Part shown: positions 14,173 to 26,217 of the stretch, one piece after another
Layout of the letters: each line of letters begins with the position of its first letter
Position numbering within the stretch: the first letter of the stretch is position 1
NCBI RefSeq assembly: GCF_964188315.1
Contig: NC_135667.1
Coordinates: 16,306,001 to 16,370,000, forward strand
DNA from: Podarcis muralis
Taxonomy: Eukaryota
DNA length: 64,000 bases
Direction of reading: 5' to 3'
The notes under the pieces: model-generated
What the model saw: the letters and a program-made list of their open reading frames with translations, nothing else
The model's database searches: none
Told to the model about the DNA's origin: nothing
Translations under genes and position numbers: made by a program

Positions 14173-15185
14173 ATGTATTTTACAAGGCTGAAGACTGGCT
14201 TCCTAACAGATCTCCAAATCATTTGTATGCATCTACTTTCCCACAAACTATCATGCACAAAATATTTATCTCCAAAGAAGCCTGTCATTAAACTGATTCT
14301 CCTCTATGGATTCCTATTTTCACTTCCACTTGATCTATTATTTCTCCAGACAAATTTAACTGTGACAGACAAAAGTACTCAGCAACAAAAGTGCTGCATA
14401 TTATTTGAAATGTGGGCCATGAGGTCGTGTGGATAGCTGAAAAACTGGGCAGCGGATGAGGCCTCAAGGAGACAATACCAAAACAAGTCATTTTTTTCAG
14501 AATAGAAAAATTGTAACTCTTAAGCTCTCAATGTAATGCTGTAACCAAGAAAGCCAATATGGTTGTTGATTGGATGTACAACAACGCAGCCTGAAAAAGA
14601 TATAGTCTCTCAGGAGCTGAAGGCCCTGTACGTATTAAAATGAAAACAGCCACAGTAGACTGAGCAGAGGAAGGACCCTGGCGAGGGTCCCCGCTCCAAC
14701 CATTTCCCTGCTTAAAGGGGCTCCTCAAGCTGCCCTTACACCCATGGGGGGGGGGGAATGCATCTCTTCCACACACACCAATGGACAGTGGGGAAAAAGC
14801 TTGAGGAAAAATCCAGATGCAAAGCAGCCCTGACCTCCCATTTGTCAGTTCAAACAGGCAGCTTCCCACGGCTTCTTTTCTTAAAAAACAAAAACTAAGA
14901 TGGAGGCATCTAACTGGGCTCTAGTCAGGAGGCCAAGTGTGTAGAAGGCCCTTGTCAGTTTCACATCTGAGGTAAAGTCATAATGCCTGCGTAGAGTGAA
15001 GGGCCTTCCCCCACAGACTAGTCACTTTCAATTCCCCTGCCAGATAGGGCTCCCTTCCTCACTGGAGTGAGCATCATCTAAACCTTCAAAAACATAAAAG
15101 GAGAGGGAGGAAATAATGGCAGCACCCTTCCCTCCCCACATCGCTCCCTTTGCATTAGCGCTTTCTAGACTCCTCTCACAAAAGA

Positions 15186-17559
15186 CTACGACAAAGTAGA
15201 GGCCTGCTTTGAGGCGCTGCCCTGCCTGAGCCCTGAAGCCCCAGTGCCATTGGAGTCCCCACAGCTTGTGTCCGGAGGATGGGAGGCTCCCGAAGCCACA
15301 CAAAAGTTTTCTCCCCTCGCTGCTCCGGAAGAAACAGCAGCACCGTCCTGTTGTTTCTCATATTCGGTGTATTTCTTGGATGACCCATAAACTCGCTCAG
15401 CTGGGTATTTGAGGCGGTTCTTCTCTATCTTGTGGAGGGCGGCCGAGGGAAGGTCCACGCGGCACTTGTCCGCCAGAGCCACCAGGTAGATGAGGACATC
15501 GCTGAGCTCGTCGGAGAGGGCTTCGCGCTCGGGCGCTGTCCAGCCCGGGAGACCTTCGGGGGCTTCTTCCCGCCACTGGCTAAAGGGCAACAGGGGAGAA
15601 ACGATGGAGTGAGGAGGGGAAGGAGCTAAGAAGGGATTCGAAGCTTCCAAAGGGAAGTCGTGGTGGTTTGTTGCAGCAAAGCCAACAAAGGCTCTTGGGA
15701 CACCTTAAAGCAGGAGGGAGGCACCTGAGGGCTGACTGCACCCACTAGGCCTCTCTGCCATGCTCTTGGAACTCTGCTTAGGCCTCACCCTCTTCCCCCA
15801 GCCTCCTTGAGAGGTTTTGCCTGGCTCAAATGTGCCCTTGAACACCAACCATGCCTCTTGAAGGGCAGAGAGAGATGCGTGTAGACATGAACCTACGCTA
15901 CGAAGATAAAATTTAGACTGATTGCTCTGCCCCCTTTGTCTCCGGGAAAGGGGAATGCGCCTCTAGGGCTGAAAAGGGGTCCACTTTGCCACCATCTTAA
16001 AGGCTAACAACTTTATTGTGGCGTAAGCTTTCGTCAACTGCAGACCACTCCCTCAGATGCATGCAGTGTTACCCTGAGTGCCCAGTTCTGGGCAATGCCA
16101 CTTAAGAATGATACTGACAATCTGGAACGTGTGCAGAGGACAATCAAGGGTTTGGAAACCAAGCCTTATGAGGAACAGTTGAAGAAGCTGGGTATGTTTA
16201 GCCTGGCAAAGAATCATAGAACTGTAGGGTTGGAAGAGACCCTGAGGGTCATCTAGTCCAACCCCCTTCAATGCAAGAATCTCAGCTAAAGCGTCCATGA
16301 CAGAGGGCCATGCAACCTCTGCTTAAAAACCTCCCAGGAAGGAGAGTCCACAACCTCCAGAGGGAAACCGTTCCACTGAGACTGAGGAGATATGATCGCC
16401 ATCTTCAAATATCTCCAGGGCTGTCCCATGGAAGACGGAGCAAATTGGTTCTCTCCTGCTCTGGAGGACAGGCCTCGAACCAACAGATTCAAGTTACAAG
16501 AAAGATTCTGACTAAACATCAGGAAGAACTTTCTGACAGTAAGAGCTGTTTGACAGTGGAACAGACTACCTCAGGAGGTGGTGCCAGTTGATGGGAGTTG
16601 TAGTCCAACAACCTCTGGAGGGCACCAGCTTGGCAAAAGCTGGATCAGATGATCGCCAAGGACCCTTCTGATTCTATGAAAGCACCTTTAGGCCTCCATC
16701 CTCTCCTTCCCTTCCCTCCCCAAAATACTGCCCGTGGAGGGAGGCCTACTCTGCAATCTCGTCACCCGTACTCACAAGAGCTCCGCCAGCTCCCCAACCT
16801 CCCCGACGAGGGCAAGCAGCAGATTCCGAGGCTGGTGGTACTTCCCCCAGCCACGCTCGGCTGTGAAACCAGACTGGAGTCTTCGGCTGTGGGAGAGACA
16901 AGAGAGGTGAAGAGAGGTTGATGCTGTGTTCAGCAGAGGCTGGTCCATTAGGGCAAAGGAGGCACTGCCCCAGCAGCTTCAGACTTGCTCTTGGCTAGTC
17001 TCCATTTGCCTGCCTCTTTACTTACAACCAGTTGGGATGGCTCCACCTACAGTGGCTCTGGCGCCACCTACTGTTAGTCTCCCCGCCTTCTGCCCTACCA
17101 GTCCCAAACAGCACCAATGACCCCTGTACACTGGTTCAGATTTGGGGGTGGGAAGGAGAGGGTGAAGTTATAATCAACCATAAATGTGGGGCCTGTGAGG
17201 TGGGAAGAGAGAAAGGAGGGTGTCTCACATGTCTTCCAAGGTAGGCTCAGCGCTGAACTGAAAAGCCTCTGCTGAATTTCCGTTCCTGTTCCTCACCAAC
17301 ACCTCATCCATTTCTTCCTCTTTTGCCTTTGGTGAACTGGCCGATGGGAACAATGCCTGGCGAAGGAAGTCACGGTAACTGTGCGCCTTCATTCCAACCA
17401 ACTAGTAAGGATTTTTCCCATCAGTTTGCTATTGGCAGTTTAAAATTGTTGAGATTGGGAGTTGCGAGCTAAACCTGGCAGCTATTTTAAGTCAAGCACT
17501 AATCTATTCCCTGCTGGCCAAAAGCCCCACTTGTCCCCAAAAAGCATAGGCTAAATAAA

Positions 17560-17600
<41 letters not shown>

Positions 17601-18440
17601 GAATATGCTATACTGTACATATATACTTCTATGCATACCCATAGGATATTTCTATCCACAGGATATTCTGGAGATACATATATACACAATAAGGTAAAGG
17701 TACCCCTGCCCGTACGGGCCAGTCTTGCCAGACTCTAGGGTTGTGCGCTCATCTCACTCTATAGGCCGGGAGCCAGCGCTGTCCGAAGACACTTCCGGGT
17801 CACGTGGCCAGCGTGACAAGCTGCATCTGGCGAGCCAGCGCAGCACACGGAACGCCGTTTACCTTCCCGCTAGTAAGTGGTCCCTATTTATCTACTTGCA
17901 CTTAGGGGTGCTTTTGAACTGCTAGGTTGGCAGGCGCTGGGGCCGAACGACGGGAGCGCACCCCGCCGCGGGGATTCGAACCTCCGACCACATGATCGGC
18001 AAGTCCTAGGCACTGAGGTTTTACCCACACCCCCACCCGCGTCCGCATCATACACAATACCGATAAGATATTCTGGATATGCTTCCAGAAACTCTGGAAT
18101 TACAACTCACACAGAAACACAACCCACTCATAGGACATCTCCCGTTTGTTACCTGTGTCCTCCTGGGCATGGTGGCTCCCGCACCAGAATTCTTCAGGTC
18201 ACCAAGCCCATCATCAGCAGAAGGCACAGAACAGCCTGGAGGCAAATGCTTCTGATGCTCAGCCGTGGCCATGTGCAGACGAAGGTCAGAGTAGCCAGCA
18301 GGCATCGTACCCTTGCAGAGCCTGCAGGCTGCTTTGCCATTGTCTCCTGCCACAGGGCAAAGCCAGACCTTCAAATCCTCCTCTTCCTCCCAGTCTCTGC
18401 AATACTTTCCCTCACTGGCAGCCCTCTTTGACGATGTCAT
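15186..18440 (-). CDS. DCTPP1: dCTP pyrophosphatase 1 (MazG-like), with a predicted N-terminal zinc-finger exon
   Basis: Core exons (minus strand) are 17311-17229 (MDEVL...FSAEPTLEDI), 16886-16776 (RRLQSGFTAERGWGKYHQPRNLLLALVGEVGELAELF) and 15579-15186 (QW...ELSDVLIYLVALADKCRVDLP...KKYTE). All junctions are GT-AG and in frame. An upstream acceptor at 17356 and an exon at 18452-18153 (ATG 18440) extend the ORF in frame to 921 nt (~306 aa). The core is certain; the extension is predicted. Confidence 0.9.
16085..16580 (+). mobile_element. Degraded CR1 LINE 3' fragment, with an opposite-strand CR1 tail nested at ~16211-16378
   Basis: Frames give CR1 ORF2 C-terminal motifs (QFWAMPL..D.D.LERVQR; KPYEEQLKKLGMFSLAK; DMIAIFKYLQG; NIRKNFLTVRAV.QWNRLP) with stop codons. 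The run is interrupted by gaatcatagaactgtagggttggaagagaccc..., a reversed CR1 3' end. Confidence 0.8.
17562..17600. repeat. (AAT)n microsatellite
   Basis: Read directly from the sequence. Confidence 0.95.
17692..18045 (-). mobile_element. Sauria-type SINE, antisense, with TSD atacacaata
   Basis: Reverse complement of the 4410 copy. The 10-bp TSD lies at 17682-17691 and 18050-18059. Confidence 0.9.
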
Positions 18441-18452
18441 GATTGACCAGGC
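18153..18452 (-). CDS. Zinc-finger exon (C-x2-C-x13-H-x5-H, hAT-transposase N-terminus-like), predicted first coding exon of a long DCTPP1 isoform
   Basis: Acceptor tctctttcag|GCCTGGTCAATCATG, donor ACACAG|gtaac in phase 0, and no stop codon. Translates to MTSSKRAASEGKYCRDWEEEEDLKVWLCPVAGDNGKAACRLCKGTMPAGYSDLRLHMATAEHQKH... Confidence 0.75.
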
Positions 18453-19349
18453 CTGAAAGAGATATGGGGAGAGAAGCTTGCTGAACAAAGTGGTTGTTAG
18501 CAGCAAAGGATAAAGAATTTAGCCGAAGCTTCTTTCACACCATTTAAAGCCTTGTGATACCACTTTAAGAAGTCATGGCTTCCCCCAAAGAATTATGGGA
18601 GCTGTAGTTTGTTAAGGGTGCTGAGAGTTGTTAGGAGACCCCTATTCCCCTCCAAGTGTTACAATTTCCAGGGTAGTTTAAAGACCAACCCCTCTTCACA
18701 GGGAACTCTGAGAATGGCAACTCCTGTGCCTTTTCCAACATGTGAACACTGTCTGCAGTTTGTATCCACCCAAGTTATATTCAGAGTAGACCCAATGAAA
18801 TTAATGGACCTAAGTCAGCTAGGTCTATTCATTTCAATGGGTCTTCACAGTTGGCTAAATCTCTGGCTGCATTATGCACCGTACATGTAAAACACTTCCC
18901 TCCAAAGAGTCCTGGGAACTTGTAACTTAATTAATCCTCGCTGAGCAACAATTCCACGCACCCTTAACAAACTACACTTCCCAGGATGATTTGGGAGAAG
19001 TCACGTGCTTCAAACTTCTTCCACCTACACAAGACTCTGTGGCTTCTCTGCTGCAGGCGCATAGAGAGTTGTAGATGCATCACATCTGTGTGTGTCCCCC
19101 ACCCAGAATGATAATTTTTTCTAAGCCAATACTCTCCACTGCTGAGCTGCATAAAGTCTGCTTTCAGTAGCACGGCTCACGCCCTGAAAAAATAGAAGTG
19201 AGCGCACATCACTTGAGCATGTGCAGAAGGCTCTTTCCCTCACCCTTAAGAAACCCCCCCCCCCCAGTGTACACACACACCCCTCAGTGTATTCTCTGCA
19301 ACTCTAATGCCCGGCTCTCAACGAAAGCAAAGCAACATACAGAGCCTAC

Positions 19350-19660
19350 CTGGGCTCCAAAGGAAACAGAGCAGGCAGGATGCGACCCCTTCTAACAAGC
19401 CACGCGCGTTTTCCCGGGTTCAGCGCAGGGAAGCCAACCCACCATCGCCACTGAGCTGGGCTCTGATAGGGTACAAAGGGTATGACGAACGCACTTGCGG
19501 CCCAATCAAAGGTGGCTGGTGGAAGGCGAGAGGAATACCGCAACCAATCAAAAGGAGCAGAGGGTCGCGCCCAATCGGAGGAGAGGCAACAAATAGCGAG
19601 TATAGAAGGAAGAGGCGCCGGGATAAAGAGTCATAAATATGCAAAGAAGCGGCCGGCTCA
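19350..19660 (-). promoter_or_regulatory. CpG-rich DCTPP1 promoter and probable non-coding first exon
   Basis: CpG-dense, with CCAAT at 19502, 19544 and 19571, and a minus-strand donor GAGCCCAG|gtaggc at 19350/19349. Confidence 0.55.
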
Positions 19661-20079
19661 AGGAGTTACAGGAAAAGAAACATCCGGACTGGCTTTATAT
19701 ATATCTGCTATATATCGGCCACAACAGTATCATAAAATATCATTAACTAATACTAAATAAGCAAATAAAAATAATATAAATATAAGAAATATAATAGGTT
19801 CAATATTGTGCACGAATACAGGCATATATATGGGAGGAAACTGCGTGAAAGGCGCGGATTCCCCAGTCAGGGAAGATGCAAGAATCCATAAAACTTGCAG
19901 CTGGTCCTTTCTTGCGCATTCTCCTCTCAAATCTGCGTTTTCATTTTAAGGGTTGTTGCGCTGGCCTTAGCCCTAGAAAAATAGAAGTTCCAGCAATTTC
20001 GGGTGCTTCCAGTGGAGAGGGTTTTTCTGCACAGTTCATGTGAGCTGTCTGGATTTTTACAGGGAGCACGGATGATGAC

Positions 20080-20899
20080 CAGGACCGGATTTAGGTTTGA
20101 TGAGGCCCTAAGCTACTGAAGGTAATGGGGCCCTTTATATGTCCAGCTGTCCTTTGTCAACAACAAATTGTTGCTGTTTTTTGTGTTGAATATATGGTAA
20201 TTTATGGACCTAATAGGTATCTAAAGCCATTTGCACATAACAAAATATGTATTTTGTCATAGTAATTGTTGAACTGAAATACAATTAAGAAAGAGAGAGA
20301 AATGAGCAAACGAGTGATATTTTAGGGAGCAGGCTAGCAGGTGGGGCCCATTACTTACATCATAGGAGGCTACACAACACAAAATACTGTTGCTATATGT
20401 GGGTTTTATTTTATTTGTTTTTTATCTTATATTTTGGATATCTGTACATCCAGATTTTTTTCCTTTAAATTTTTTGGGGGGCCCCAATAGAGTGGGGCCG
20501 TAAACTACAGTGGTGCCTCGCAAGACGAAATTAATTTGTTCTGCGAGTTTTGTCGTCTTGCGATTTTTTTCGTCTTGCGAAGCACGGTGTCGGGAAAGTT
20601 TTGGAAAAGCTTCAAAAATCACCAAAGTCTTTAAAAACCTCAAAAAAGGCTACCACACCGCGTTCTATGAGTTGCTCCTCAAAGTCAAGTCGCAACTGTA
20701 TTAACGGTGTTAAGAAAAAGGAAACAAACTTGCAAGACGTTTCCGTCTTGCGAAGCAAGCCCATAGGGAAAATTGTCTTGCGAAGCAGCTCAAAAAACAA
20801 AAAAACCCTTTCGTCTAGTGAGTTTTTTGTCTTGCGAGGCATTCGTCTTGCGAGGTACCACTGTATTGCTTGTTTAGCTTATATGTAAATCCGGCACTG
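20080..20899. mobile_element. Non-autonomous hAT element with 8-bp TSD
   Basis: TIRs caggaccggattta / taaatccggcactg (12 of 14 match). TSD atgatgac at 20072-20079 and 20900-20907. Confidence 0.9.
20508..20863. mobile_element. Tc1/mariner MITE nested in the hAT element
   Basis: TIRs cagtggtgcctcgcaagacgaa / ttcgtcttgcgaggtaccactg, with TA on both sides. Confidence 0.9.
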
Positions 20900-21574
20900 A
20901 TGATGACGATGATGCACCTATCATCCTGTACGGCTCCCATAACTACCCCCTCCCTATTCTGTTTTCTTTTTAACAAATGCTGGAAATAGTATTTTAATGA
21001 AAAGACCGTCACCATGTTGCCAGTGGTGCAGATGTTCTGTTGCGTTATTTTCCAATACTTCTAAAAGGCTGCTCATGCGATTGCTGATCCTTTCAATGGA
21101 GCTTTGCCTACTTTGGCCCTGATATGATACAGCTGTGCAGGAGAGGTTATTTATACAAGGGAAAAACAAGGGTCCAAAGTGCCAAAAGCAATCATCGTGG
21201 TCCTAATCCCACCCCTCATTGTACAGCCTCCCACCCCTCAGGAATTCAGGAAATTTCTCTTGTGCAACCAGTTAGACAAGCGAAAAAGTTGCAGAGAGAC
21301 ATTTTGGAGCCTGGCTAGTCAGGTAAGCAACCAACATTGCCTCTTTTAAACTAGCTACATCTGGGATGCCCACAGAACTTTAGATTCTAGGGGGAATCCT
21401 AGAACTGCCTTGTCTGGTCTAGTTACTGTGGTTTAACAGTTGGTTTTTTCATTATTGGTTCACACTTTGTTGGGTTTGGGGAGAAATGTATTGCTTTAAT
21501 ACGTTGCTTTTTTAAAGGCTCCCTTTTTATGCTCTTGGCTTTAAATGCTGGACTCTCACCCTCCCCTTTGCGCG

Positions 21575-21619
<45 letters not shown>

Positions 21620-21658
21620 CTAGTACTAGCAGCAGGTAAAAGTTAGAATAATCACATC

Positions 21659-21804
21659 CAGTGCTTTTTTTCCTTTAAAAAATGTTTAGGGGTACTCTCA
21701 TTTTCCTACTCATATTGAAATACTGCCCCTCAATGAAGCCAAACTTAGATTCACAAAATGTTTAGGGGTATGCGTACCCCTGCATCCTCCCCAAAAAAGC
21801 ACTG
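21659..21804. mobile_element. hAT MITE
   Basis: TIRs cagtgctttttt / aaaaaagcactg. TSD atcacatc / accacatc (7 of 8 match). Confidence 0.75.
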
Positions 21805-21917
21805 ACCACATCCTTCCATTAAAAAATAAGTGAGCCTAATGAGGAAAAGTTGGATTTTAACCTCTGTTCTGCAGGGCTCTTTGCTTAGGCAGTCCAGTTT
21901 CTCTCCCCCCCCCCCAC

Positions 21918-21966
<49 letters not shown>

Positions 21967-23327
21967 ACACACCTCTGCCCTAGTACACAGTACTTTTTAG
22001 AGGTAACCTCAGCTGGGACTTTGGGCAAAGTGATGCTACCACTTTGAGTGCCTCAAGGCTGTTGTCAGTATTTTGCAGGAATTATTCACACAACAATTGA
22101 CTTTAATAGTAATAAAGAAAAACCTGGGCTGCTTGGGATTTGGAAAGTAATGGGGAAATGTGTTCCAAAACGTGAGCTGAATGAATGATTACAGGAAAGA
22201 AATGGAAATACCCTGCAAATAATTTTGGGGTGAATGTAGGATGAATGGTCCTTGTCAGAGAACGCCTGCATAGTAAACAAATCAGAACAGATGCTCACAA
22301 AAGATTGGCCATAGTTTAACCACTGTGTAAACTTTGTGTACAGACCAGCAGGAGAGCTGGGCTGGTTGTTAAGTAAGAAAGAAAGCAGGCAGGTGGGGGC
22401 TGGCAGTGTCCTGCTCCCCCTGAAAAACCAGGGCAGGGGTGTCAACTTGAAGAAAATATTGGCGAGCAGGTAAGCCCTGACCCATATAGTCAGTCACAAG
22501 AAGCAGCTTACACACATCATTTGAATGGCAATTCACATTAACTTTTGGGCAGTTGGCCCCCTCAATTATTTTATTGGGGGGGCCCTGGGAGTTGGCTGCT
22601 ATGAACCAGGGTGAGCCTTGCTTCCTTTCCTTTTACTAACAGCATACCACGAGTAAAAAAAACAAGGGGGTGAGTATAACAATCCCCAAAACAGTTCAAT
22701 GAGAACTGAATATGCTTGGCAGCCTCAGAATGTTGGGAAACTTTTGTAAGGGTGGGACAGATTGCTGGTTGGGGGGGGGCAGCGCAGAGAATAGACTGGC
22801 ATATCCTGCAAAAGGGTGTTGCTGGCTAGCACCCTGTACAAGAGGACACTACCCAGAAGGTCCCGTTAGCATTTCTTCCTTTTTCCCCCCAACAGGGTTT
22901 TTTAATTGAACCCATTATATTTCTACATTAACATAAAAAAATGAAAGGGGGGGGGGAGAAAATAAAAATTGTCCAGTTTACTGGTGTGATATTATTGTTT
23001 CTTCTGGTGTATAGGGGAGAAATTGGGGCGCAGAAGCTGGAGCTAGCTTATAGGTGAGTCCCACTTCAAATAATCTGAAAAGCACCTATATCTAGAAAAT
23101 GGTCAGCTGTCAGACTGTGGCCCCTTTGTCCAAGTAGAGAGACGGTCATTTGCAGTCACCAGCAACACGGACCCAAACATTATCACATTCCAGATTTTCT
23201 GAGTTTTTAGGTAGTCATAGGAAGATAACCAAATTTAGCATCCTTCTCCTCCCACTAGGGAGAGCTGCCATCAGGCAAAGGGTAGCAATTCCCACCCCTC
23301 ATTCCTACCCCTAGGTGACACCATTAG

Positions 23328-26217
<2,890 letters not shown>

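What the first reader, a model, noticed from the sequence alone, without database searches (positions are those of the whole stretch)
17229..18452. Transposase-like zinc-finger exon spliced in frame onto DCTPP1, predicting a ZnF-dCTPase fusion protein
Seen in the sequence: a stop-free 300-nt exon (18452-18153) has a strong acceptor, an ATG at 18440 (A at -3) and a phase-0 donor. The DCTPP1 exon carrying the canonical ATG (17311) has its own acceptor exactly 45 nt upstream (17356), open in the same frame (ALFPSASSPKAKEEE-MDEVL). Joining them gives one 921-nt ORF of ~306 aa. The added N-terminus reads KYCRDWEEEEDLKVWLCPVAGDNGKAACRLCKGTMPAGYSDLRLHMATAEHQKH, a C-x2-C-x13-H-x5-H finger preceded by W...WL. 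Established knowledge: human DCTPP1 is ~170 aa with no zinc finger, and this finger pattern resembles the N-terminal DNA-binding fingers of hAT-superfamily (ZNF862/KIAA1586-like) transposases. Inference: a captured transposase finger could tether a nucleotide-pool sanitising enzyme (dCTP, 5-methyl-dCTP) to DNA or chromatin. I saw no remaining transposase core or TIRs around the exon, consistent with domestication rather than a fresh insertion. I do not know whether this isoform is already annotated.
Basis: partly seen in the sequence, partly recalled or inferred. Interest (0 to 1): 0.85.

Follow-up and report, generated by a model that had tools for sequence, protein, structure and literature searches.

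The report
Transposon zinc finger fused to lizard DCTPP1
In lizards and snakes the nucleotide-cleaning enzyme DCTPP1 starts with a zinc finger taken from a hAT-type jumping gene; this is the normal form of the protein, it is about as old as squamates, and gene models already show it although no paper in the searched library describes it.

Summary
The 300-nt exon at 18452-18153 is spliced in frame to 17356. RNA contigs from two studies carry this junction at the same depth as the other DCTPP1 junctions.

It is not an extra isoform. NCBI already annotates the fused protein, as plain "dCTP pyrophosphatase 1", in 27 squamate entries covering geckos, skinks, lacertids, anguids, iguanians and snakes. 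These include a Podarcis muralis model whose finger exon is identical to the window. The "canonical" ATG at 17311 exists only in Podarcis. Elsewhere the finger exon supplies the start codon.

A turtle has the same gene neighbours but no finger. The finger is homologous to the N-terminus of hAT-like proteins. Its fold and signature look BED-like, but it falls below Pfam thresholds.

The finger core is under purifying selection (omega 0.15-0.35). The tail of the exon is near neutral, and the enzyme core has omega 0.10. The finger has decayed in snakes, Anolis carolinensis and Hemicordylus.

Non-gecko fingers are net acidic, unlike the basic family at large, which weakens the DNA-tether idea. I found no paper on this. 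It is a new member of the host-transposase fusion genes.

The parts
19396..19560 (-). Candidate DCTPP1 promoter, with three CCAAT boxes (read as GATTGG) and an E2F-like GAACCCGGGAAA motif
   Evidence: The block is conserved with Elgaria, Sceloporus and Tiliqua upstream of their finger exons. A similar CCAAT-box block lies directly in front of the gecko finger exon and of turtle exon 1. No RNA depth was seen here in the four runs laid, so its activity is inferred.
19350..19395 (-). Candidate 3' end of a non-coding exon 1. The exon ends at 19350 and the donor GT is at 19349-19348.
   Evidence: The CAG|GT donor is invariant in the four-lizard alignment. The acceptor in front of the finger exon needs an upstream partner. 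The 5' limit is unknown, and no RNA data confirm this exon.
18153..18452 (-). Transposase-derived exon. Acceptor AG at 18454-18453, ATG at 18440, 96 codons, phase-0 donor GT at 18152-18151.
   Evidence: Sequence. X2 contig 12 covers 18152-18452 joined to 17355-17229 and ends exactly at 18452. The acceptor 11-16 nt before the ATG is conserved in the six non-gecko species examined. The exon is homologous to hAT-like N-termini.
18246..18407 (-). BED-like zinc finger core, residues 12-65. Includes W17 and W26 and the zinc ligands C39 (18326-18324), C42 (18317-18315), H56 (18275-18273) and H62 (18257-18255).
   Evidence: These residues are nearly invariant across 50 family members. The AlphaFold model gives pLDDT 74-84 for residues 11-65, with a helix, three strands and a helix. 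Omega is 0.15-0.35, significantly below 1.
18153..18245 (-). Tail of the captured exon, residues 66-96. This is the first part of a disordered linker.
   Evidence: pLDDT is below 50. Omega is 0.68-0.78 and not distinguishable from 1. It still aligns with the LTDxGF stretch of transposase relatives.
17229..17356 (-). 128-nt DCTPP1 exon. The first 45 nt are read-through linker, the Podarcis-only ATG is at 17311, and an alternative acceptor lies at 17326.
   Evidence: The junctions are supported by RNA contigs. The exon is 128 nt in six of the eight other squamates threaded and 122 and 119 nt in the two snakes. The P. muralis model P0160 (296 aa) lacks ten residues here, which I read as use of the 17326 acceptor. 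Met at this site occurs only in Podarcis.
16776..16886 (-). 111-nt DCTPP1 exon carrying the start of the MazG-like domain
   Evidence: Junctions 16886/17229 and 15579/16776 are seen in contigs. The exon is 111 nt in all nine species threaded.
15186..15579 (-). Last coding exon. It holds the rest of the MazG-like domain plus a 55-residue C-terminal tail seen here only in Podarcis. The stop codon is at 15188-15186.
   Evidence: Pfam MazG-like scores 35.1 bits against a cut-off of 27. It is 93% identical to P. lilfordi DCTPP1. The acidic residues E168, E171, E200 and D203 are invariant across 32 sequences.
17720..18040 (-). tRNA-derived SINE inside the intron between the finger exon and the 128-nt exon. 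It is not part of the mRNA.
   Evidence: Sequence. RNA depth from the whole repeat family is very high on both strands.

Best explanation
This is the squamate form of the DCTPP1 gene.

Shown:
- A hAT-type transposase's first ~96 codons became the first coding exon of DCTPP1. They comprise its start codon, a BED-like C2H2 zinc finger and a short tail.
- This exon is spliced in phase 0 onto the old 5' end of the next exon.
- The product is a finger (residues ~11-65), a ~60-residue disordered linker, and an intact all-alpha MazG-like dCTP pyrophosphatase domain.
- In the window's species (Podarcis muralis, judged by identity to model P0160) this is the predominant mRNA.
- In most squamates it is the only way to start translation, because no other in-frame Met lies before the enzyme domain.
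- The capture dates to about the origin of squamates.

Inferred:
- In most lizards and geckos the finger is kept by selection as a folded zinc module. It most likely recruits the enzyme to a macromolecular partner. By knowledge of the mammalian protein, that enzyme is a tetramer.
- I put nucleic-acid or chromatin binding at roughly 35% for lacertids and higher for geckos. A protein partner or localisation role gets roughly 30%.
- In snakes, Anolis carolinensis and Hemicordylus the finger is decaying, and the exon survives mainly as the start-codon-bearing leader.
For: - Splicing and dominance: junction contigs have depth equal to the other DCTPP1 junctions in two studies, plus one raw read. 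Depth just upstream of 17356 is only 0.5-2. The exon is present in at least 12 RNA-type contig sets.
- Orthology: 27 squamate DCTPP1 proteins carry the N-terminal extension.
- Gene structure: a finger exon of 255-294 nt in phase 0, then 128/122/119 + 111 + ~229 nt, between QPRT and a septin gene, in the eight other squamate loci threaded.
- Outgroups: the turtle has the same gene neighbours and a 21-nt coding exon 1 but no finger within 10 kb either side. The fish DCTPP1 hits are ~150-200 aa and align only over the enzyme part.
- Start codon: Met at 17311 occurs only in Podarcis. The Sceloporus protein has no Met at all downstream of the finger exon.
- Transposase origin: phmmer found 153 relatives at E<=1e-3. 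They include the 687-aa P0270/P0028 (DUF4371), P0051 (hAT dimerisation domain, 29.7 bits against a cut-off of 21.4) and P0011. Similarity covers transposase residues 1-98 only.
- Selection: omega is 0.15-0.35 in the finger core (2dlnL 17-76), 0.68-0.78 in the tail (not significant) and 0.10 in the enzyme core.
- Fold: finger pLDDT is 74-84, the linker 68-125 is disordered, and the helical domain spans 136-246.
- Enzyme: it matches mouse and human DCTPP1 structures at E 1e-46.
Against: - Function of the finger is wholly inferred. No binding data exist.
- Non-gecko fingers are net acidic (-1 to -6), whereas the family mean is +4.4 and only 6% of 189 other fingers are <=0. This argues against classical DNA binding in this lineage.
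- The finger has lost ligands or the Trp motif in all eight snakes, Anolis carolinensis and Hemicordylus, so it is dispensable in some lineages.
- No Pfam family reaches threshold on the window's finger.
- Structure matches to solved structures are weak (Foldseek E >= 0.13 against the PDB).
- The upstream exon that feeds the 18452 acceptor was not seen in RNA.
- dS is near saturation for deep pairs, so omega values are rough.
- X1 and X2 are only guessed to be RNA libraries. Their spliced contigs argue that they are.
Confidence: 0.8

Rival explanations
1. The finger is a sequence-specific DNA-binding domain, as in hAT transposases. It tethers the dCTPase to DNA or chromatin, for example at relics of the cognate transposon or at replication sites. 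There it would clean dCTP and 5-modified dCTP pools locally.
For: - The finger has the BED-type signature and is homologous to transposase N-termini.
- By established knowledge, such N-terminal fingers bind transposon ends, and host-transposase fusions often reuse that binding (Cosby et al. preprint).
- The finger core is under purifying selection.
- Gecko fingers remain basic, at +4 to +6.
- By knowledge of the mammalian enzyme, a tetramer would carry four fingers.
Against: - In the window's lineage and other non-gecko lizards the finger is net acidic. The basic residues of the family consensus (RAHH, KHKK) are replaced.
- The finger is lost functionally in snakes and in A. carolinensis without loss of the gene.
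- There is no direct binding evidence.
Confidence: 0.3
2. The finger is functionally vestigial. The exon is kept only because it carries the start codon and an acceptable N-terminal leader for an otherwise ordinary dCTPase.
For: - Most squamates have no other Met before the enzyme domain, so the open frame must be kept whatever the finger does.
- The exon tail evolves near neutrally.
- The finger is degenerate in snakes, A. carolinensis and Hemicordylus.
- Omega is ~0.6 for the snake pair and ~1 for Sceloporus-Anolis.
Against: - Finger-core omega is 0.15-0.35, with 2dlnL of 17-76 against neutrality, and 0.08 between two geckos. This is much lower than in the tail of the same exon.
- Both Trp residues and all four zinc ligands are intact in every full-length lacertid, phrynosomatid, agamid, anguid, skink and gecko model listed. 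The Lerista model stops before the fourth ligand.
Confidence: 0.2
3. Geckos and all other squamates acquired their DCTPP1 fingers separately, from related hAT elements. Alternatively, one lineage replaced its finger.
For: - The architecture differs. In geckos the finger lies in exon 1, 60-180 nt after the CCAAT promoter and with no acceptor. In the others it is a separate exon with a conserved acceptor.
- Spacing differs: C-x2-C-x16-H-x6-H in geckos against x13/x5 in the others.
- Non-gecko fingers are 45-50% identical to transposase relatives but only 30-35% identical to gecko fingers.
- The ML tree places non-gecko fingers inside a 108-member clade (SH-aLRT 96) that excludes geckos.
Against: - The AU test does not reject one clade (p = 0.27).
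- The gecko stem branch is long.
- Both fingers splice in phase 0 to the same 128-nt exon acceptor.
- No closely related gecko-type finger was found outside gecko DCTPP1.
- Two captures at one gene are less parsimonious than one.
Confidence: 0.3
4. The fused form is a minor alternative isoform or a gene-model artefact, and the short ~170-200 aa DCTPP1 is the main product.
For: - Podarcis has an in-frame Met at 17311 that could start a short protein.
- A few database entries are short: Pogona 143 aa and Varanus 162 aa.
Against: - Junction depth equals that of the other DCTPP1 junctions in two studies.
- There is almost no RNA immediately upstream of 17356.
- The Met is absent outside Podarcis.
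- The short entries look like incomplete models. The Varanus entry starts without a Met.
Confidence: 0.05

Closest known systems
Host-transposase fusion genes formed by exon capture (Cosby et al., bioRxiv 10.1101/2020.05.07.082677); by my own knowledge SETMAR is a classic case with an enzyme partner
   Same: A transposase DNA-binding domain is joined in frame to host exons by splicing. The junction has RNA support, orthologues share gene neighbours, and the captured domain shows dN/dS below 1.
   Different: - The host part is a nucleotide-pool sanitising enzyme, not a KRAB or SCAN type regulatory domain.
- The captured exon also became the only start codon.
- The gene is absent from that catalogue (no DCTPP1 in the text or the 10 supplementary files held).
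- That screen required a Pfam transposase domain, which this finger does not reach.
BED zinc finger (Pfam PF02892), as in hAT transposases and ZBED proteins
   Same: It has two N-terminal aromatic residues followed by C-x2-C-xn-H-x5-H. The predicted fold is a beta hairpin plus a helix. zf-BED is the commonest weak Pfam match among relatives (16 of 50). ZBED2, ZBED3, ZBED4 and RICESLEEPER fingers appear among the weak fold matches.
   Different: All matches are below the Pfam cut-off. The best is the Tiliqua orthologue, at 17.9 bits against 20.6. The window's own finger gives nothing significant. The non-gecko fingers are acidic.
Mammalian DCTPP1 (RS21-C6, XTP3TPA), an all-alpha MazG-like dCTP pyrophosphatase
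   Same: The enzyme domain matches solved mouse and human structures at E 1e-46. The acidic motif residues are invariant. The gene neighbours, QPRT and a septin gene, are conserved among the reptile loci fetched.
   Different: The solved mammalian full-length chains are 170 aa with no finger. The squamate protein has an added ~110-residue N-terminal finger and linker.
LOC114608004 of Podarcis muralis (P0270) and its lacertid orthologues: a 687-aa single-exon hAT-like protein
   Same: Its first ~70 residues are ~50% identical to the DCTPP1 finger. It is present in the same genome.
   Different: It keeps the transposase body (DUF4371, and an RNase-H-like region recorded as a weak hit). It lies at another locus and has no intron after the finger.

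Membership tests
Host-transposase fusion gene | A transposase-derived domain encoded in frame with host-derived protein sequence | tested here: met
   The 921-nt ORF joins the finger to DCTPP1. The finger is homologous to hAT-type proteins at E 1e-8 to 1e-20.
Host-transposase fusion gene | RNA evidence for the fusion junction | tested here: met
   Contigs in X1 and X2 and one raw read in X22 span 18153|17356.
Host-transposase fusion gene | Orthologues with shared gene neighbours, and purifying selection on the captured domain | tested here: met
   Eight other squamate loci have the same exon structure and neighbours. Omega is 0.15-0.35 with 2dlnL 17-76.
Host-transposase fusion gene | The captured domain is recognised by a Pfam transposase-associated model at threshold (the operational criterion of the published screen) | tested here: not met
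   The window's finger has its best Pfam E-value at 0.19. zf-BED is sub-threshold in orthologues.
BED zinc finger (PF02892) | Signature of aromatic residues followed by C-x2-C-xn-H-x3-5-[HC] | tested here: met
   W17, W26, C39, C42, H56 and H62 are present and nearly invariant in the family.
BED zinc finger (PF02892) | Profile match above the curated cut-off | tested here: inconclusive
   16 of 50 relatives match at E<=1, the best at 1.6e-4. The Tiliqua orthologue scores 17.9 bits against a cut-off of 20.6. The window's finger gives no match.
BED zinc finger (PF02892) | Zinc-dependent DNA binding | not testable with these tools
   Only indirect evidence is available: net charge is -1 in Podarcis against a family mean of +4.4.
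DCTPP1 / MazG-like all-alpha NTP pyrophosphatase | MazG-like domain above the Pfam cut-off, with close similarity to solved DCTPP1 structures | tested here: met
   PF12643 scores 35.1 bits against 27 on the last exon alone. The match to 2a3q, 6sqw and 7mu5 is at E 1e-43 to 1e-46.
DCTPP1 / MazG-like all-alpha NTP pyrophosphatase | Conserved acidic metal-binding motif (E-x2-E ... E-x2-D) | tested here: met
   E168, E171, E200 and D203 are invariant in 32 sequences including the Podarcis protein. Their catalytic role is taken from knowledge of the family.
Autonomous hAT transposon | Transposase catalytic core and hAT dimerisation domain at the locus | tested here: not met
   tblastn with four full-length relatives matches only transposase residues 1-98, in this locus and in the other squamate loci.
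Autonomous hAT transposon | Terminal inverted repeats and 8-bp target-site duplication | not tested
   These are not expected to survive since early squamate evolution, so no search was made.

The most novel reading that the evidence does not exclude
DCTPP1 captured a hAT zinc finger twice: once in geckos (inside exon 1) and once in the ancestor of all other squamates (as a separate exon). That would mean repeated selection for a finger-bearing dCTPase. Together with fusions of the same finger family to other small metabolic enzymes in other animals (QPRT in an ascidian, a P5C-reductase-like protein probably in crustaceans, NIF3 in an unidentified source), it would point to a general and so far undescribed role of this finger in targeting metabolic enzymes.
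Probability: 0.25. Interest if true: 0.8.

Novelty: new member of a known kind. Interest (0 to 1): 0.6.

Why it matters
By established knowledge, DCTPP1 controls dCTP and modified-dCTP pools. Work on human cells links it to 5-methyl-dCTP clearance and global DNA methylation (PMC4491611).

An entire order of about 11,000 species makes this enzyme with a transposon-derived zinc finger at its N-terminus. This is a natural experiment on whether pool-sanitising enzymes gain from being targeted to a partner.

Nature has also supplied controls:
- geckos, with a basic finger;
- most lizards, with an acidic but conserved finger;
- snakes, A. carolinensis and Hemicordylus, with a decayed finger.

The case also shows a blind spot in catalogues of transposase-derived genes that rely on Pfam thresholds. 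Finally, it corrects the natural assumption that the long form is a side isoform.

Tried and rejected
- Pfam on the window's finger alone gave nothing significant.
- A profile of 50 fingers against PDB sequences gave only chance-level hits.
- Foldseek against the PDB gave E >= 0.13, mostly U1/matrin-type and BED fingers. Foldseek against Swiss-Prot models gave Su(var)3-7 as best hit at E 8e-3, followed by hAT-derived fingers at E > 0.2. I use these as a hint only.
- Rfam found no RNA family in 15000-23500.
- I expected the CCAAT-rich block at 19350-19700 to be a transcribed first exon. No RNA depth was seen there in four runs, so it remains a candidate supported by conservation only.
- A chance ORF or a repeated transposon fragment is rejected. 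There is a single copy in the window, it is spliced and it has orthologues.
- The finger tree did not resolve one capture from two (AU p = 0.27). A search with the gecko finger found only gecko DCTPP1.
- The locus look-up for Hemicordylus failed.
- Tuatara, dibamids, crocodilians and birds could not be assessed. None appeared among the 120 listed homologues.
- Literature searches for DCTPP1 with transposase, lizard or BED found nothing relevant.
Full report
**Observation**

- a pyrimidine-rich acceptor ending in AG at 18454-18453;
- an exon from 18452 to 18153, with ATG at 18440 (A at -3) and 96 open codons;
- a phase-0 GT donor at 18152-18151;
- a second acceptor that places 17356 as the first base of the next exon, 45 nt upstream of the ATG at 17311 and in the same frame.

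Joining 18440-18153, 17356-17229, 16886-16776 and 15579-15186 gives a 921-nt ORF of 306 aa. The finger exon is single-copy in the window.

**RNA evidence**

I laid two contig sets and two raw RNA-seq runs of the same species on 15000-20400. X1 and X2 each contain a contig that joins 17355/6 to 18152/3 with GT..AG ends. Depths per junction:

| Junction | X1 | X2 |
|---|---|---|
| 18153 to 17356 (finger exon to 128-nt exon) | 29.7 | 121.6 |
| 16776 to 15579 | 27 | 115 |
| 17229 to 16886 | 29.7 | 115 |

- One raw read in X22 also spans the finger junction.
- In the stranded raw runs the finger exon is read on the same strand, and at about the same low depth (1-2), as the DCTPP1 coding exons.
- Depth just upstream of 17356 is only 0.5-2. 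Transcripts therefore do not start there.
- The X2 contig ends exactly at 18452. That fits a splice acceptor with more than one upstream partner.
- The partner was not seen. The region 18453-18980 is repeat-rich, and 19344-19705 had zero depth.
- A second search showed the 300-nt exon in at least 12 RNA-type contig sets from three studies, and partly in two related species.

**It is the normal squamate protein, and it is already annotated**

A full phmmer scan with the 96 residues found 153 relatives. The best hit, P0001, is annotated as "dCTP pyrophosphatase 1" of the skink Tiliqua. It carries the same finger in front of a MazG-like domain.

A search with the Sceloporus protein listed long forms of 236-306 aa, all named dCTP pyrophosphatase 1 or hypothetical protein. 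They come from:
- iguanians: Sceloporus, two Anolis, Pogona, Phrynocephalus;
- an anguid: Elgaria;
- lacertids: Podarcis muralis and P. lilfordi;
- skinks and a cordylid;
- eight snakes;
- six geckos.

A turtle (163 aa) and the fish hits (~150-200 aa, aligning only over the enzyme part) lack the finger.

P. muralis model P0160 has a finger exon identical to the window's. It lacks ten linker residues, which I read as use of an acceptor 30 nt further on, at 17326. Model P0155 is the 306-aa form and is 96% identical in the finger. The window is therefore P. muralis or a very close relative.

An alignment of 27 squamate N-termini shows that the Met encoded at 17311 exists only in the two Podarcis species. 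The others have I, T, V, P, A, R or N there. The Sceloporus protein has no Met anywhere downstream of the finger exon. The finger exon therefore supplies the conserved start codon.

**Gene structure and age**

I threaded nine annotated proteins onto their loci.
- Every squamate has a finger exon with 255-294 coding nt ending in phase 0.
- Exons of 128 nt (122 and 119 in the two snakes), 111 nt and about 229 nt follow.
- The gene always lies between QPRT (head to head) and a septin gene.
- The turtle has the same neighbours. Its first coding exon has only 21 coding nt and is spliced in phase 0 to a 104-nt exon. tblastn finds no finger anywhere in its 22-kb locus.

The ancestral gene thus already had its ATG in a short upstream exon. 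In squamates a transposase-derived exon took over that role.

In the six non-gecko squamates examined, a pyrimidine tract and AG lie 11-16 nt before the ATG. A block about 1 kb further upstream is conserved among four lizards. It holds GATTGG (CCAAT) boxes and an E2F-like GAACCCGGGAAA motif, and it ends in an invariant CAG|GT at 19350|19349. This is my candidate promoter and non-coding exon 1, supported by conservation only.

In geckos the finger coding sequence follows a similar CCAAT promoter directly, with no acceptor in between.

**Origin of the finger**

Relatives include:
- a 687-aa single-exon hAT-like protein conserved in Podarcis and Zootoca (P0270/P0028; DUF4371, with an RNase-H-like region recorded as a weak hit);
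- salamander proteins, one of which (P0051) has the hAT dimerisation domain above the Pfam cut-off.

Similarity covers transposase residues 1-98 only. No other transposase remnant is left in any locus.

Across 50 family members W17, E18, W26, A37, C39, C42, A48, H56 and H62 are nearly invariant. This is the BED-type pattern. zf-BED is the commonest weak Pfam hit (16 of 50) but never reaches the cut-off.

AlphaFold models give a confident small helix / beta-strand / helix module for residues 11-65. They predict a disordered stretch from 68 to 125, the helical enzyme domain at 136-246, and a disordered tail in the Podarcis protein. Fold searches gave only weak matches, enriched for U1/matrin-type and hAT-derived BED-like fingers.

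**Selection**

Codon models on fixed species trees:

| Region | omega | 2dlnL against omega = 1 |
|---|---|---|
| Finger core | 0.15-0.35 | 17-76 |
| Exon tail | 0.68-0.78 | 1.5-2.3, not significant |
| Enzyme core | 0.10 | 177-303 |

Pairwise finger-core values are 0.08 between two geckos, about 0.26 among non-gecko lizards, 0.6 between two snakes and about 1 between Sceloporus and Anolis. dS is close to saturation for deep pairs, so these numbers are approximate.

The residue table agrees.
- Both Trp residues and all four ligands are intact in the lacertid, Sceloporus, agamid, Elgaria, Tiliqua, Logan skink and six gecko models. The Lerista model stops before the fourth ligand.
- All snakes have lost the first Trp motif through a 9-residue deletion, and their fourth ligand varies.
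- Anolis carolinensis has W17L and H62Y.
- Hemicordylus has C39H and H62Q.

**How it probably works**

Shown: the protein is a zinc-finger module on a long flexible linker in front of an intact dCTPase. The enzyme's acidic motif residues are invariant, and it matches solved mouse and human DCTPP1 at E 1e-46.

Inferred: in lineages with an intact finger, the finger targets the enzyme to a partner. By knowledge of the mammalian protein, the enzyme is a tetramer.

Six non-gecko DCTPP1 finger cores, Podarcis included, have net charge -1 to -6. For 189 other family fingers the mean is +4.4 and only 6% are at or below zero. Four of the five gecko fingers are at +4 to +6.

I therefore rate nucleic-acid binding at about one in three for lacertids. 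A protein-partner or localisation role is about as likely. A vestigial leader gets about one in five.

**One capture or two**

Gecko and non-gecko fingers differ in several ways:
- exon architecture;
- ligand spacing;
- sequence: 30-35% identity to each other, while non-gecko fingers are 45-50% identical to transposase relatives.

In the ML tree the non-gecko fingers sit inside a supported clade that excludes geckos. However, the AU test does not reject a single clade (p = 0.27). No gecko-type finger was found elsewhere. The question stays open.

**Novelty**

The fusion is present in public gene models, so the protein as such is not new. I found no paper that mentions it:
- no paper in the library holds both DCTPP1 and lizard;
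- searches with transposase or BED returned nothing relevant;
- the catalogue of tetrapod host-transposase fusions does not contain it in the text or the supplementary files held. Its screen required a Pfam transposase domain.

I file it as a new, order-wide member of the host-transposase fusion genes, with an unusual partner (an enzyme) and an unusual consequence (the captured exon became the start of the protein).

Noticed in passing
window 21140-21363: A ~200-nt non-coding block between QPRT and DCTPP1 is 76-83% identical in all eight other squamates examined, including geckos and snakes. It contains two GGGGTGGGA boxes and TTGGCACTTTGGAC. It gave no hit in the turtle locus and has no Rfam match. 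It is probably a squamate-specific regulatory element.
   Followed up: partly
proteins P0038, P0029/P0010, P0008 (relatives found): The same finger family sits at the N-terminus of other small enzymes. Examples are QPRT in the ascidian Phallusia (413 aa), a protein whose sequence looks like pyrroline-5-carboxylate reductase (P0029, source not recorded; the crab Chionoecetes protein P0010 shares its N-terminal part), and a NIF3 protein with two fingers. QPRT is also the head-to-head neighbour of DCTPP1 in reptiles. This may be coincidence, or recurrent capture of this exon.
   Followed up: partly
L010 6001-8064 (Podarcis muralis, another chromosome): A 687-aa intron-less hAT-like gene (LOC114608004) is at least 90% identical between Podarcis and Zootoca. 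It is a possible domesticated transposase, and it is a close full-length relative of the DCTPP1 finger in the same genome.
   Followed up: partly
window 15186-15350: Podarcis DCTPP1 carries a ~55-residue C-terminal extension after ...KKYTEYEK. The other squamate proteins stop at that point.
   Followed up: no
window 18320 and other sites in 18153-18452: The window's finger has Leu41 next to the zinc ligands (CRLC). The RNA contigs, P0155 and nearly all other lizards have Phe (CRFC). The two P. muralis alleles differ at four residues in 96 codons.
   Followed up: no
window 16086-16628 and 17534-18076: Repeats inside DCTPP1 introns show very high RNA depth on both strands. The first also shows 'opposite strands' joints, as expected of an inverted-repeat element expressed from many copies.
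   Followed up: no
window 17326: An alternative acceptor 30 nt inside the 128-nt exon would explain RefSeq model P0160 (296 aa). Among the joints listed for the four runs, only the 17356 acceptor appeared.
   Followed up: partly
window 23391-23990 (+): A large QPRT coding exon lies head to head with DCTPP1. The order MYLPF-like gene, QPRT, DCTPP1, septin gene is seen in Anolis and the turtle, and the QPRT-DCTPP1-septin part in the other loci fetched.
   Followed up: partly
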